From Chrysemys picta bellii (Eukaryota), in contig NC_088802.1 of NCBI RefSeq assembly GCF_011386835.1, forward strand, positions 248,001 through 312,000: 64,000 nt of DNA, read 5' to 3'. Under the pieces are notes generated by a model. The model searched no databases. It worked only from the letters and a program-made list of their open reading frames with translations, and was not told the DNA's origin. Each line of letters starts with the position of its first letter. Position 1 is the stretch's first letter. Below are positions 40,752 to 45,091 of the stretch, in pieces. The position numbers were made by a program, and so were the translations under genes.

Positions 40752-40875
40752 TAGGGTGACCAGTCAGCAACTGTGAAAAATCGGGACAGAGGGTGGGGGT
40801 AATAGGAGCCTATATTAGAAAAAAGACCCCAAGATCGGGACTGTCCCTATAAAATCGGGACATCTGGTCACCCTA
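40752..40875. mobile_element. hAT MITE, 124 bp
   Basis: Perfect 12-bp TIRs TAGGGTGACCAG / CTGGTCACCCTA and a perfect 8-bp TSD GCATGGAG (40744-40751, 40876-40883). Confidence 0.93.
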
Positions 40876-41230
40876 GCATGGAGTGACCCCTTCACTGCCT
40901 GCTTCATCAGGGTCTGGTCCTGGCTCCCATCCCCCGAGCAGGGAGAGAACCCAGGAGTCCTGGCTCCCAATCCGCCCCCGCGGGGGTGAGAACCCAGGAG
41001 TCCTGGCTCCCAACCCCCGAGCAGGGAGAGAACCCAGGAGTCCTGGCTCCCAGCGTGCGCCCCCCGCCCCCAGAGAACCCAGGGGTCCTGCATCCCCCTC
41101 CCGCCTGCCCCCCCGCACCCCGATTCTGGGCCGGGAGGACTCTGACCATAGAGTTCCCGCCTAGCGCTGCCGTCCGTGGGGCCCGCCCCCGCTCTATGGT
41201 CCCCGCGCCGCCCCCCCCCCCCCCACTGTC

Positions 41231-44200
41231 ATGGCGGCCCCGCTGCGGCTCCGCTCCACGCTGGCCCTGGTGACAGGTGCCCCCAGCAGGGGGCGCTCGG
41301 GGGCGGGGCCTGACCCCCCCCCCGGGGATCCAGCCCCCCTCCCCCATCCAGCATTTGAGGGGCTGGGGCAGGTTCCGGGGGGGCACTTGGGGGGGGGCTG
41401 TGTGGGGGGGCCCCCGAGGCGGGGGGGGGCAGGGGGCATTTGGGGGTTCTTGAGGAGTCCCTGAGGCTGGGGGAGGTTCGTGGGGGGGCTCGGTGGGGGG
41501 GTGTTTCTGGGTCCCCCCCCCCCCGTCTCTGACGCTGGTCCCCCCATGGCAGGCGGGGGCAGCGGGATTGGTACAGGTATCTGCCCGGGGGGGGGTTTCT
41601 GGGGGTCCCTAGAGGGGTTCTGGGTCCCCCCCACCCCCATCTCTGACGCTGGTCCCCCCATGGCAGGCAGGGGCAGCGGGATTGGTACAAGTATCTGCCG
41701 GGGGGGTTCCGGGGGTCCCTAGAGGGGTTCTGGGTCCCCCCCCATCTCTGACCCTGGTCCCCCCATGGCAGGCAGGGGCAGCGGGATTGGTACAGGTATC
41801 CGCCTGGGGGGGGTTTCTGGGGGTCCCTAGAGGGGATCTGGGTCCCCCCCCATCTCTGACGCTGGTCCCCCCATGGGCAGGCGGGGGCAGCGGCATTGGC
41901 CGCGCTGTCTGTGCCCGGCTGGCCGAGGAGGGGGCGCTGGTGGCCGTGGCCGACCAGAATGAAGCGGGGGCTGCGGAGACAGTGCGGGGGCTGCCACGGG
42001 GGGAGCCCGGCCAGGAGCATGAGGCGTTCGGGGTGGACGTCAGCTCAGCCCAGAGCGTGGGGGAGCTCATGGCTCGGATCCAGGTAACGGGGCTGGAGAG
42101 AACCCAGGAGTCTGGGCTCCCCCCACTGTAACCAATGGATTCCTCTCCCCTCCAGAGGACCCAGGAGTCCTGGCTGCCGCCCCATCACTCTAACCACTAG
42201 GCCCCACTGCCCTCCCTGGGAACCCAGGTGTCCTGACACCCCTCCTGGCCTCCGGGAGAACCAGGCTCCCTGATCCCGCCCCCCACCCCACTCTAAGCAC
42301 AAGCCCCCACTGGTGTCCGGGAGAACCCAGGCCCGCTGACCCCTTCCCCCGCCCACTCTAAGCACAAGCCCCCACTGGCCTCAGGAGAACCCAGGCCCCC
42401 TGATCCCCCCCCCCCACTCTAAGCACAAGCCCCCACTGGCCTCAGGAGAACCCAGGCTCCCTGATCCCCCCGCCACACTCTAAGCACAAGCCCCCACTGG
42501 CCTCGGGAGAACCCAGGCCTCCTGACCCCCTGCTGTCCCCAGGCCCGGTTCTCCGCCCCGCCCCGGGTCTGCGTGAGCTGCGCCGGAATCACCATGGACG
42601 AGTTCCTGCTCAAGCAGACAGAGGCAGCGTTCGACAAGGTGCTCCAAGTCAACCTCAAGGTACGGGGTCTCCAGATGGGGGCAGGGCAGGGCCCCCCCAG
42701 CTGGCCCCCCCCCCCCAGGCTAACCTGGTCCCCCTCTCCCCAGGGAACCTTCCTGGTCACCCAGGCTGTGGCGCGTGGGCTGGTGGAGAGCGGAGCCCCA
42801 GGGGGGTCCATCATCAACATGGGCAGCATCGTGGGCAAGGTGAGAGCTGCGAGCTTCCTCGGAGCAGTGTCCTGGGGGGGATAGTGGGGGCTGTGAGCTT
42901 CCTCAGGACAGTGTCCTGGCGGGATAATAGGAGCTGTGAACTTCCCTAGAGCAGTGCTATGGGGGGATAATAGGGGCTGTCAGCTTCCCTGGAGCAGTGC
43001 CCTGTACTCACATGTCCCTCTCCCTGACAGGTGGGGAACCTGGGGCAGGTGAGCTACGCAGCATCCAAGGCTGGCGTGGAGGGGCTGACCAAGACCGCTG
43101 CCAAAGAGCTGGCCAGGTGGGGCTGGGGGGGGACTGCAGGGTGGCAAGGGGGCAGGCTGAAGTGAGGAGGGCGGGGCAGGCTGAGGGGGAGGACTGCAGG
43201 GCAAGGGGGCAGGCTGCGGGGTGGGCTGGGAAGGCTGTGGGTACAGGCTGGGCAGTGCAGCTGGGGGGCAGGCCGAGGAGGCCTGGGAAAAGTAGGGCAA
43301 ATCATGGGCAGGGGGGCAGGGGGATGATGTGGGGGGCTATTCTGGGAAGATGGGGGGCTGGAGCTTAGGCTGGGGTGGAGGTTTGGGAGACATAGTTGGG
43401 GGCAGCTGGCGGTTGGGGGGAAGCAGGTCAGGGGGAGCTGTGGTGACCAGGCAGGGGGGCTGCCCTCTCCCTCATGGTCCCCCCCAGGTTCGGGATCCGC
43501 TGTAACGTGGTGCTTCCCGGGTTCATCGCCACCCCCATGACGGACAAGGTGCCTCCCAAAGTGCTGCAGAAGGTAACACCGGAGGGTCTGGGCCCCGTAA
43601 CTCCCCCGCCCCCTCCCTTCAGAGAACCTGCCCTGTATTACCCTGAGCCCCACAACCCCCTCTGCCTCGTATCTGCCTCCCCCTGAGCCTCACAACCCCT
43701 CTCTGCCCCATATCTACCCACCCCACAACCCCCCTGCCCCATGTTCCCCTCAGCCCCATAGTGCCCCTCTACCCCGTTATCCACATGCCCAGCCCACGTT
43801 TCCCTCTGAAGAACCTGCCCCATATTCCCCCATCACCCTGGCCCCCTCAGCCCCCTCTGTTCCATACTTCCCCCAGTGCACTCCTCCCCACGGAGCCCGA
43901 CAATCCCTCAGCACCCCTTATTCCTGCCCAGTACCCCCCATTGCTCCACAACCTAGGGGATGGGGGATATTGGGGCTGTGAGCTTCCTCAGAGCAGTGCC
44001 CTGGACGGAGCTATGAGCTTCCTCGGAGTGGTGCATGGGGCGGGGGAGTGGGGGCACTATCTCCCCTGAGGCACCCAGCCCATAACCCTTTATTACCCCC
44101 TCCCCCCTGCAACTCCTCTCCTTCCCCTGCAGATCCGTGCCCTGCCCCCTGGTTCCCCCCCTTTCCCCTGGGGTGCAGGGGGGCTCCATGCTCACCAGCC

Positions 44201-45091
44201 ATCTCTGACCCCTCCTCTCCCGCTGCTCAGTTTGCAGGGATGGTGCCGTTGGGACGACTCGGGGACCCCAAAGGTGAGACCCCCGACTCAGGGTGCCCTG
44301 TGCAGTGGGGCTGGATCTGCTGGGCGTGGGGAGGAGGGGTGTGGGGCACAGTTCTGGGGGGTGCATGTATAGATTGGGGTACGGCGGGGTTGGGGCTGTG
44401 CACACTGATTTGGGGTGTTGCACAGAAGACTCCCCACTAGGGAAGGGGCCGTGGCTCCCACACGTGTGGCTGTTACTGACCCACCCCCCCTTCTGCCCTC
44501 AGAGGTCGCTGACGTCTGCGTCTTCCTGGCCTCAGACGAGAGTCGCTACATAACAGGGGCCAGTGTGGAGGTGACAGGTATGGGGCGGGAGTCAGGAGCC
44601 AGGACTCCTGGGTTCTCTCCCTGGCTCGGGGAGGGGAGTGGGGGCTGCTGGGTTAGAGCGGGGGGGGGGGCTGGGAGCCAGGACTCCTGGGTTCTATCCC
44701 CAGCTCTGGGAGGGAAGTGGGGGTTGGAGAGTTAGAGCAGGGGGGCTGGGAGCCAGGATTCCTGGGTTCTCTCCCTGGCTTGGGGAGGGGAGTGGGGGCT
44801 GCTGGGTTAAAGCAGGCGGGGCTGGGAGCCAGGACTCCTGGGTTCTCTCCCAGTTCTGGGAGGGGAGTGGGGTCTAGTGAGGTAGAGACCAGCCAGGATG
44901 GATGGGAGGATGGGGTGAGAGACAGAGATATGGGGAGGGGCAGGGATACGGGGTGCTTGGGAGTAGGGGCAGGGGTGGGGGAAAGCGGGAGGAACAGAGA
45001 GACGAGGGAGTGGGGGGAGACAGTTGGGGGCTCCCTCCTCCATCAGGGGCTCCCTCATTCTCTCTCTGTTGCAGGGGGTCTCTTTCTCTGA
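41231..45091 (+). CDS. HSD17B8: 17-beta-hydroxysteroid dehydrogenase 8 / 3-oxoacyl-ACP reductase alpha subunit, 255 aa
   Basis: Exons 41231-41276, 41881-42083, 42543-42659, 42744-42839, 43031-43116, 43488-43572, 44231-44273, 44503-44577, 45075-45091. SDR motifs TGGGSGIG and YAASK; C-terminus VEVTGGLFL. Confidence 0.97.

What the first reader, a model, noticed from the sequence alone, without database searches (positions are those of the whole stretch)
41525..41900. HSD17B8 intron 1 repeat creates three in-frame 24-nt candidate microexons duplicating the Rossmann TGxxxGIG motif
Seen: each 105-114-bp unit has the real branch point and acceptor (CTGAC...CCCCCCATGGCAG) followed 24 nt later by a donor: 41553-41576 (CAG|GTATCT), 41667-41690 (CAA|GTATCT) and 41772-41795 (CAG|GTATCC). 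All are phase 1-1 with 85-90-nt spacer introns. Including the first gives ...[20 protein letters not shown]; the other two encode GRGSGIGT. Established: TGxxxGIG is the SDR cofactor-binding loop. Inference: exon birth by junction duplication that could change cofactor binding.
Basis: partly seen in the sequence, partly recalled or inferred. Interest (0 to 1): 0.75.

Follow-up and report, generated by a model that had tools for sequence, protein, structure and literature searches.

The report
Decoy splice-acceptor repeat in turtle HSD17B8
Intron 1 of the painted turtle HSD17B8 gene holds three extra tandem copies of the gene's own intron-end/exon-start junction; this repeat occurs in most turtle lineages, probably stays unused by splicing, and does not look like three newborn coding microexons.

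Summary
A 105-bp tandem repeat (41517-41899, 3.5 copies, 90% match) repeats the branch point, pyrimidine tract, acceptor AG and start of HSD17B8 exon 2. Each of the three upstream copies is followed after 24 nt by a GT, in phase 1-1. One correction: the spacers are 90, 81 and 85 nt.

The window is Chrysemys picta bellii. The same junction repeat occurs in 8 of 9 turtle species examined, with 1 to at least 27 decoy acceptors. It is absent from Carettochelys, a gull and a skink. All decoys share one origin and one breakpoint.

The donor-like GTATCT arose by two substitutions in one superfamily. Pseudo-exon length and frame are not conserved: 24 nt in emydids, 24-29 nt with in-frame TAG in Mauremys, and no donor in Chelonia or Emydura. 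Among the emydid copies, the pseudo-exon has more variable positions than its flanks. No turtle protein model whose sequence I read carries the 8-residue insert.

The candidate donors are weak and the exons are far below the usual size for exon definition. G runs fill the spacers, as in human CBS 844ins68, where the distal acceptor is used.

Low-level inclusion therefore remains untested. This scan has already reported similar arrays on other DNA of this genome (AQP14, RBM14).

The parts
41231..41276 (+). HSD17B8 exon 1 ([15 protein letters not shown] plus the first base of a Gly codon); donor CAG|GTGCCC
   Evidence: Exon chain fitted to public protein P0130. Rough donor score is -0.04, the weakest in the gene.
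41277..41880 (+). Intron 1 (604 nt), G-rich, with the junction minisatellite in its 3' half
   Evidence: No unusual RNA structure: z = +2.75 against shuffles for 41231-41960.
41517..41899 (+). Tandem array, period 105, 3.5 copies; the last partial copy is the real intron-1/exon-2 junction
   Evidence: TRF; unit alignment A1.
41553..41576 (+). Pseudo-exon 1 (24 nt, GGGSGIGT) behind decoy acceptor 1; branch A at 41532; donor-like CAG|GTATCT
   Evidence: rough donor score 1.9.
41577..41666 (+). Spacer 1 (90 nt) with a G-quadruplex-like run at 41587-41624
41667..41690 (+). Pseudo-exon 2 (24 nt, GRGSGIGT) behind decoy acceptor 2; branch A at 41646; poor donor CAA|GTATCT
   Evidence: rough donor score -1.25.
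41691..41771 (+). Spacer 2 (81 nt) with a G-quadruplex-like run at 41700-41734
41772..41795 (+). Pseudo-exon 3 (24 nt, GRGSGIGT) behind decoy acceptor 3; branch A at 41751; donor-like CAG|GTATCC
   Evidence: rough donor score 0.43.
41796..41880 (+). Spacer 3 (85 nt) with a G-quadruplex-like run at 41806-41842; ends in the real branch point (A at 41859) and acceptor, which has one extra G (CATGGGCAG)
41881..42083 (+). Real exon 2 (203 nt), starting [13 protein letters not shown]; donor CAG|GTAACG
   Evidence: 100% match to P0130.
42084..45091 (+). Rest of the gene: exons 3-9 at 42543-42659, 42744-42839, 43031-43116, 43488-43572, 44231-44273, 44503-44577 and 45075-45091; intron 3 is only 84 nt

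Best explanation
This is an old, turtle-specific minisatellite. It was born from one tandem duplication of about 100-110 bp that covered the last ~70 nt of HSD17B8 intron 1 and the first ~33-38 nt of exon 2.

The locus lies within about 0.3 Mb of a sequence end in five species' chromosome records and 1.55 Mb from one in a sixth, Mauremys. It is GC-rich and full of repeats. Unequal exchange or slippage has since changed the copy number many times, from 0 to at least 27 decoys per species.

Every upstream unit keeps a full branch point, pyrimidine tract and AG, and so forms a decoy acceptor. In the common ancestor of emydids, geoemydids and tortoises, two substitutions turned the copied exon sequence CTGTCTG into GTATCTG. 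This put a weak donor-like GT behind each decoy. In Chrysemys that leaves three in-frame 24-nt pseudo-exons.

I infer that the spliceosome joins exon 1 almost always to the last, real acceptor. Only that acceptor is followed by a full-size exon (203 nt) with a good donor. The 24-nt pseudo-exons are too short and their donors too weak for exon definition. The G runs packed between the identical acceptors would favour the distal site, as shown for human CBS 844ins68.

Shown here: the anatomy, the age, the shared origin, the lack of coding conservation, and the absence of the insert from the turtle protein models whose sequences were read.

Inferred: silence of the decoys in mRNA, the mechanism of distal choice, and near-neutrality.
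For: Array and unit anatomy.

The window is identical to Chrysemys picta bellii CM062329.1, about 290 kb from the record's start.

The same junction repeat is found in:
- Malaclemys, 4 decoys
- Mauremys, 9-10 decoys
- Chelonoidis, at least 1 decoy beside an assembly gap
- Gopherus, at least 27 decoys
- Chelonia, 7 decoys
- Dermochelys, 1 decoy
- Emydura, 8 decoys
It is absent from Carettochelys, a gull and a skink.

In a tree of 57 units, all real junctions form one clade and all decoys the other, with support 99/99. The breakpoint CTGTCTGC|GGGGGG is shared by Emydura and Chelonia decoys, and the testudinoid GTATCTG aligns to it.

Pseudo-exon length and frame vary between species:
- 24 nt in emydids
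- 26-29 nt in most Mauremys copies, five of them with an in-frame TAG; two copies are in frame (24 and 27 nt)
- 17 nt or no donor in Chelonia
- no donor in Emydura
One Mauremys unit has lost its AG. Five of 24 pseudo-exon columns vary among the 7 emydid decoys, against 2 substitutions in the 32 nt upstream.

Rough donor scores are 1.9, -1.25 and 0.43, against 3.2-6.7 for 7 of the 8 real donors. There are six G runs of 3 or more per unit.

Chrysemys has RefSeq models of 255 and 227 aa only in the clusters listed. None of the roughly 25 turtle models whose sequences were read has the insert.

In two Malaclemys units the spacer would be only 62-68 nt.

Literature: duplicated 3' splice site with G runs in CBS 844ins68 selects the distal site (PMC1802585, citing Romano 2002). 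Donor-side junction minisatellites are mostly silent in F7, LMNB2 and PDGF (PMC1557585).
Against: The decoy acceptors match the real one apart from a single extra G in the real copy.

The real exon-1 donor is weaker (-0.04) than two of the three candidate donors.

An 84-nt intron is spliced in this same gene, so 81-90-nt spacers are feasible. GC-rich genes with short introns can use intron definition, which would favour the nearest acceptor.

In-frame products would escape nonsense-mediated decay.

All emydid and tortoise pseudo-exons are multiples of three (24, 27, 33 nt). This rests on only about two independent indels.

Only 15 of the 26 members of the main protein cluster were listed. An insert-bearing isoform could be among the rest.

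Persistence of the array in 8 of 9 turtle species is long for a neutral minisatellite.
Confidence: 0.72

Rival explanations
1. One reading: one to three of the 24-nt pseudo-exons are spliced into a measurable share of Chrysemys HSD17B8 mRNA. This would give isoforms with 8, 16 or 24 extra residues that repeat the glycine-rich NAD-binding loop, and would alter or disable cofactor binding in the HSD17B8-CBR4 reductase.
For: Complete acceptor signals matching the real ones apart from one extra G in the real copy, 24 nt in phase 1-1, and no stop codon. Candidate donors 1 and 3 score above the gene's own exon-1 donor. Spacers of 81-90 nt are comparable with the real 84-nt intron 3. All 7 emydid pseudo-exons keep exactly 24 nt. 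In-frame products would not be removed by nonsense-mediated decay.
Against: No protein model whose sequence was read carries the insert. Frame and donor are not conserved outside emydids and tortoises. The pseudo-exon has more variable positions than its flanks. Unit 2 has CAA|GT. Gopherus tolerates at least 27 such units. Two Malaclemys spacers are only 62-68 nt. From my own knowledge (Dominski and Kole 1991), internal exons under about 50 nt with ordinary sites are usually skipped. An 8-residue insert between strand beta-1 and helix alpha-A would separate the loop from one of its two anchors; this is inference, not modelled.
Confidence: 0.15
2. The array is kept because it works at the RNA level. 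It could be a landing pad of branch points and pyrimidine tracts that helps the very weak exon-1 donor find a partner. Or it could be a G-run/G-quadruplex platform that tunes intron-1 retention and so HSD17B8 output.
For: The array persists in 8 of 9 turtle species across both suborders. The exon-1 donor is the weakest in the gene. Each spacer has a G-quadruplex-like motif and six G runs. Several RefSeq models in Caretta and Chelonoidis read through the last unit, which hints at retained or internally started transcripts.
Against: Copy number ranges from 0 to at least 27 with no sign of an optimum. Carettochelys and Dermochelys manage with 0-1 decoys. Unit length and content differ widely (76-111 bp). 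There is no excess RNA structure. Other junction minisatellites in the same genome were judged neutral by earlier notes of this scan (unchecked here).
Confidence: 0.08
3. The repeat, or its copy number, is an assembly artefact of a GC-rich homopolymer-rich region.
For: Long C and G runs are error-prone. Chelonoidis has an N gap at this place.
Against: Other turtle assemblies carry the same kind of array with species-specific units. Chrysemys and Malaclemys share apparently orthologous units.
Confidence: 0.03

Closest known systems
Human CBS 844ins68 (duplicated intron 7/exon 8 acceptor junction)
   Same: A tandem duplication of an intron-end/exon-start junction gives identical 3' splice sites with G runs between them. 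The distal, authentic site is used and the normal protein is made (PMC1802585, citing Romano et al. 2002). Here too the identical acceptors are separated by G-run-rich spacers, and the annotated protein uses the last one.
   Different: CBS has one extra copy, as a human polymorphism, with 68 bp between the sites. Here there are 3 extra copies (0 to at least 27 across turtles), fixed across lineages and about 105 bp apart. Each has a donor-like GT that could close a microexon. Distal choice has not been shown experimentally here.
Junction-spanning minisatellites on the donor side: F7 IVS7 (37 bp), CBS IVS13 (31 bp), IFI6/6-16 intron 2, LMNB2 (100 bp), PDGF intron 4 (81 bp)
   Same: In these minisatellites one unit spans an exon/intron boundary, so the authentic splice site is accompanied by many identical pseudo-sites that mostly stay silent (PMC1557585). 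Unit size (about 100 bp in LMNB2) and copy-number variation are similar.
   Different: Those arrays repeat 5' splice sites downstream of the real one, and the most upstream (authentic) site wins. Here 3' splice sites are repeated upstream of the real one, and the most downstream is the annotated one. In IFI6 and CBS the first pseudo-sites are used at some level, so silence cannot be assumed.
Neural-type microexons (3-27 nt cassette exons)
   Same: Size (24 nt), multiple of three, flanked by AG and GT.
   Different: Known regulated microexons are conserved in length and sequence across vertebrates and have strong flanking signals (my own knowledge). These are not conserved even among turtles, have weak donors, and no UGC motif is visible between branch point and AG.
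Acceptor-junction array in turtle AQP14 and donor-junction array in RBM14
   Same: Same genome and same kind of minisatellite built from the gene's own splice junction. Earlier agents reported that transcripts used only the genuine copy (not checked here).
   Different: Different genes. The HSD17B8 units also carry a donor-like site that closes an in-frame pseudo-exon repeating a cofactor-binding motif.

Membership tests
Splice-junction-spanning minisatellite (F7 IVS7 / LMNB2 / CBS type) | Head-to-tail tandem array of a 30-110-bp unit inside an intron | tested here: met
   TRF: period 105, 3.5 copies, 90% matches.
Splice-junction-spanning minisatellite (F7 IVS7 / LMNB2 / CBS type) | One terminal unit spans the authentic exon/intron boundary, so pseudo-sites copy the real site | tested here: met
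   The last partial unit ends at 41899, 19 nt into exon 2. Decoy acceptor sequences equal the real one except for one extra G in the real copy.
Splice-junction-spanning minisatellite (F7 IVS7 / LMNB2 / CBS type) | Copy number varies | tested here: met
   Between species, 0 to at least 27 decoys. Variation within Chrysemys was not tested.
Splice-junction-spanning minisatellite (F7 IVS7 / LMNB2 / CBS type) | Pseudo-sites are silent or nearly so in mRNA | not testable with these tools
Only indirect evidence exists: no protein model read carries the insert.
Alternative microexon (cassette exon of 27 nt or less) | AG acceptor and GT donor flank a short in-frame segment | tested here: met
   41553-41576, 41667-41690 and 41772-41795, each 24 nt in phase 1-1. 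The donor of unit 2 is CAA|GT.
Alternative microexon (cassette exon of 27 nt or less) | Length, frame and splice sites conserved in related species | tested here: not met
   24 nt only in emydids. Mauremys has 24-29 nt, five copies with an in-frame TAG. Chelonia and Emydura lack a usable donor. The pseudo-exon is the most variable segment among emydid copies.
Alternative microexon (cassette exon of 27 nt or less) | Observed inclusion in transcripts | not testable with these tools
None of the turtle models read has the insert, and only 15 of 26 cluster members were listed.
HSD17B8 / classical short-chain dehydrogenase-reductase (host gene) | TGxxxGxG cofactor loop and YxxxK active-site motif; adh_short domain; closest solved structures are HSD17B8 | tested here: met
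   P0130 reads [11 protein letters not shown] and SYAASK. Pfam PF00106, PF13561 and PF08659 are on record. PDB 4cql and 2pd6 (estradiol 17-beta-dehydrogenase 8) match at E of about 1e-94. The window's exons fit P0130 exactly.
CBS 844ins68-type duplicated 3' splice site | Identical tandem 3' splice sites with G runs between them | tested here: met
   Four acceptors 105-114 nt apart, with six G runs of 3 or more per unit.
CBS 844ins68-type duplicated 3' splice site | Exclusive use of the distal site, dependent on the G runs | not testable with these tools
   Needs RNA reads or minigenes.

The most novel reading that the evidence does not exclude
In emydid turtles a minor but real share of HSD17B8 mRNA includes one to three of the 24-nt pseudo-exons. 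This would yield subunits with a doubled or tripled glycine-rich NAD loop that enter the HSD17B8-CBR4 tetramer and change its cofactor use or act as dominant negatives. That would be an exon caught at birth from a splice-junction minisatellite.
Probability: 0.05. Interest if true: 0.65.

Novelty: new member of a known kind. Interest (0 to 1): 0.3.

Why it matters
Arrays of perfect copies of a real splice site are natural experiments in splice-site choice. The known cases are nearly all on the donor side and in humans.

The turtle HSD17B8 series offers 0, 1, 3, 4, 7, 8, 9 and at least 27 near-identical acceptors in front of the same conserved exon. In one superfamily each acceptor is paired with a weak donor. 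RNA-seq across these species could show how far decoy acceptors and sub-minimal exons are ignored, and whether G runs explain the choice.

As a claim of new coding exons that alter a cofactor site, the finding is weak. As biology of the enzyme, it is probably ordinary.

Tried and rejected
One of them, the search of solved structures, used P0130, which is identical to the window's own product.

2. Searching or folding the microexon-containing protein. No structural model of the insert exists.

3. Alligator as outgroup. Its protein P0012 is not on record for locus look-up. I used a gull and a skink instead.

4. RNA structure that might hide the decoys. The fold of 41231-41960 is no more stable than shuffles, z = +2.75. 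Rejected.

5. Codon-level selection on the pseudo-exons. There are only 5 variable sites (3 synonymous-like, 2 not), too few to test.

6. The multiple-of-three lengths in tortoises and emydids. These rest on about two independent indels and are contradicted by Mauremys. Not taken as evidence of coding constraint.

7. Literature on turtle HSD17B8 intron repeats. Nothing relevant was found. One paper search failed on a syntax rule.

8. The donor weight matrix uses frequencies recalled from the literature. It is a rough ranking only.
Full report
**What is there.** Positions 41517-41899 of the window form a tandem array with period 105, 3.5 copies and 90% matches. Aligning the four units shows that each upstream unit repeats the end of HSD17B8 intron 1 and the first 19 nt of exon 2 almost exactly. 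Similarity to the real exon falls away after ATTGG at 41899.

- The repeated intron end is CTCTGAC, a C-rich tract and CATGGCAG.
- The three upstream acceptors open 24-nt stretches at 41553-41576, 41667-41690 and 41772-41795.
- These are followed by CAG|GTATCT, CAA|GTATCT and CAG|GTATCC.
- They are in phase 1-1 and would encode [16 protein letters not shown] and GRGSGIGT.

**The host gene.** The window is identical over the whole gene to Chrysemys picta bellii CM062329.1, about 290 kb from the start of that chromosome record. A search for an exon chain consistent with the public 255-aa RefSeq protein P0130 gives nine exons:

- 41231-41276
- 41881-42083
- 42543-42659
- 42744-42839
- 43031-43116
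- 43488-43572
- 44231-44273
- 44503-44577
- 45075-45091

The introns are 604, 459, 84, 191, 371, 658, 229 and 497 nt. The protein carries TGGGSGIG and YAASK. Its best solved relatives are human HSD17B8 structures 4cql and 2pd6, at E of about 1e-94. The annotated protein uses the last acceptor.

**Other turtles.** I fetched the orthologous loci through their public proteins and analysed intron 1.

| Species | Decoy acceptors | Notes |
|---|---|---|
| Malaclemys | 4 | |
| Mauremys mutica | 9-10 | 111-bp unit |
| Chelonoidis | at least 1 | beside an assembly gap |
| Gopherus flavomarginatus | at least 27 | over 3 kb, with a seven-unit higher-order repeat; the array runs off the fetched locus |
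| Chelonia mydas | 7 | 111-bp unit, 96% matches |
| Dermochelys | 1 | |
| Emydura (side-necked) | 8 | 76-bp unit |
| Carettochelys | 0 | |
| Gull (Rissa), outgroup | 0 | intron 1 holds unrelated 31-bp repeats |
| Skink (Tiliqua), outgroup | 0 | intron 1 is about 100 nt, with no repeat |

In the five species with chromosome-scale records where the locus lies near an end (Chrysemys, Malaclemys, Chelonia, Dermochelys, Gopherus), it sits within about 0.3 Mb of that end. In Mauremys it lies 1.55 Mb from the start.

**One old origin.** In a maximum-likelihood tree of 57 units, the nine real junctions form one clade and all 48 decoys the other, with support 99/99. Decoys group by family within their clade. 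Some Chrysemys and Malaclemys units pair as apparent orthologues.

The alignment of representative units shows why:

- Emydura and Chelonia decoys still carry GCTGTCTG from exon 2. It is joined at the same point to GGGGGG-TTTCTGGG from the upstream intron. This is a shared duplication breakpoint.
- The original unit therefore reached about 33-38 nt into exon 2. It predates the split of side-necked and hidden-necked turtles.
- In emydids, geoemydids and tortoises the same positions read GTATCTG.

The three Chrysemys 'microexons' are thus copies of one mutational event. A donor-like GT of this quality, in frame, within 60 nt of an acceptor is expected about 9% of the time in this window.

**No sign of coding constraint** (unless noted).

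- The pseudo-exon is 24 nt in all seven emydid decoys.
- In Mauremys it is 26, 26, 27, 26, 26, 29, 24 and 28 nt. Five of these copies have an in-frame TAG; two (24 and 27 nt) are in frame.
- One Mauremys unit has lost its AG altogether.
- In Chelonia it is 17 nt or has no donor. In Emydura there is no donor.
- In tortoises it is 24, 27 or 33 nt to the position homologous to the emydid donor (units; one search's best-scoring donors give 21, 24 and 27). All are multiples of three, but this traces to about two indels.
- Among the seven emydid decoys, 5 of 24 pseudo-exon columns vary. The 32 nt upstream show 2 substitutions and one C-run shift, and the 9 nt of donor region show 1.
- Two Malaclemys spacers would be only 62-68 nt.

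**Splice-signal strength.** I used a rough donor weight matrix, with frequencies recalled from the literature, so it ranks only.

- The candidates score 1.9, -1.25 and 0.43.
- Seven of the eight real donors score 3.2-6.7.
- The real exon-1 donor scores only -0.04.

The decoy acceptors cannot be told apart from the real one. What differs lies downstream: a 203-nt exon with a good donor, against 24 nt with a weak one. From my own knowledge, internal exons below about 50 nt with ordinary sites are usually skipped (Dominski and Kole 1991).

Each unit carries six G runs of three or more and a G-quadruplex-like motif about ten nucleotides past the candidate donor. In human CBS 844ins68, a duplicated acceptor junction, G runs between the two identical sites promote use of the distal one (PMC1802585, citing Romano et al. 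2002). The fold of the region is no more stable than shuffles, so I do not invoke RNA structure.

**Transcript-level evidence.**

Direct evidence is therefore missing.
- Indirectly, a protein word search anchored on exon 2 and the cluster listings returned about 45 turtle HSD17B8 models. None of the roughly 25 whose sequences I read has an 8-residue insert after LVT.
- The clusters listed hold two Chrysemys RefSeq models, of 255 and 227 aa.
- Only 15 of the 26 members of the main cluster were listed, so this absence is not complete.
- Several models begin inside intron 1. Examples are Chelonoidis MAGRGGSGIGIGIY..., Caretta MTVCWGVFLG..., and 242-aa [10 protein letters not shown] models in Gopherus, Emys and Terrapene. 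These show either retained or internally started transcripts, or annotation trouble caused by the array.
The effect on the Rossmann loop is therefore argued only from the known role of TGxxxGxG between strand beta-1 and helix alpha-A.

**Comparison with what is known.** Minisatellites that repeat a gene's own splice junction are known on the donor side in human F7, CBS IVS13, IFI6, LMNB2 and PDGF. Their pseudo-sites are mostly, but not always, silent (PMC1557585). CBS 844ins68 is the acceptor-side analogue with a single extra copy. Earlier notes of this scan describe the same kind of array in this genome's AQP14 and RBM14 genes (unchecked here).

The HSD17B8 array is a further member. Two points are particular to it:

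- It has been carried across turtle evolution with very different copy numbers.
- In one superfamily each decoy acquired a weak donor.

**Verdict.**

| Reading | Estimate |
|---|---|
| Silent, near-neutral decoy-acceptor minisatellite | about 0.72 |
| Measurable inclusion of the pseudo-exons | about 0.15 |
| RNA-level regulatory role | about 0.08 |
| Assembly artefact | about 0.03 |

The decisive test is junction counting in turtle RNA-seq, or RT-PCR across exon 1-exon 2.

Noticed in passing
window 41545-41547, 41659-41661, 41764-41766, 41873-41875: Every unit has an ATG in a CCATGG context 8 nt before the acceptor. In Malaclemys, Gopherus and others the ATG of the real unit is in frame with exon 2. 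Several public models (Gopherus flavomarginatus, Emys orbicularis, Terrapene; 242 aa, [10 protein letters not shown]...) start there and lack strand beta-1, so they are probably mis-annotations caused by the array. In Chrysemys an extra G puts this ATG out of frame.
   Followed up: partly
L009:1-3026 (Gopherus flavomarginatus): The same junction minisatellite has grown to at least 28 units over more than 3 kb. It has a seven-unit higher-order repeat of about 750 bp and runs off the fetched locus. Exon 1 was not reached.
   Followed up: partly
window 41359-41511 and 41587-41842: There are six G-quadruplex-like motifs on the sense strand of intron 1: three upstream of the array and one in each spacer, about 10 nt past each candidate donor.
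   Followed up: no
window 42230-42540 (intron 2): About five tandem copies of a roughly 60-bp unit (ctctaagcacaagcccccactggcctcaggagaacccaggc...) lie just before exon 3. This is another minisatellite close to a splice acceptor.
   Followed up: no
window 42850-43000 (intron 4): Three to four copies of a roughly 55-bp unit (gggataatagg.gctgtgagcttcc...agcagtg) lie between exons 4 and 5. A related copy sits in intron 6 near 43950-44030.
   Followed up: no
window 44590-44870 (intron 8): A run of turtle SINE-like copies (gggagccaggactcctgggttctctccc...). Similar elements lie at 40800-41100, upstream of the gene.
   Followed up: no
L003 (Chelonoidis abingdonii) and proteins P0126, P0010, P0002, P0124, P0128: RefSeq models in Chelonoidis and Caretta translate part of the intron-1 repeat as an N-terminal extension. 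The Chelonoidis locus has a 1474-N gap just upstream, so its copy number is unknown.
   Followed up: partly
L008:616-971 (Carettochelys) and L010:872-1468 (Rissa): Intron 1 of the same gene holds unrelated minisatellites in the pig-nosed turtle (44-bp unit, 8 copies) and in a gull (about 31-bp unit). The intron seems repeat-prone in several reptile lineages.
   Followed up: no
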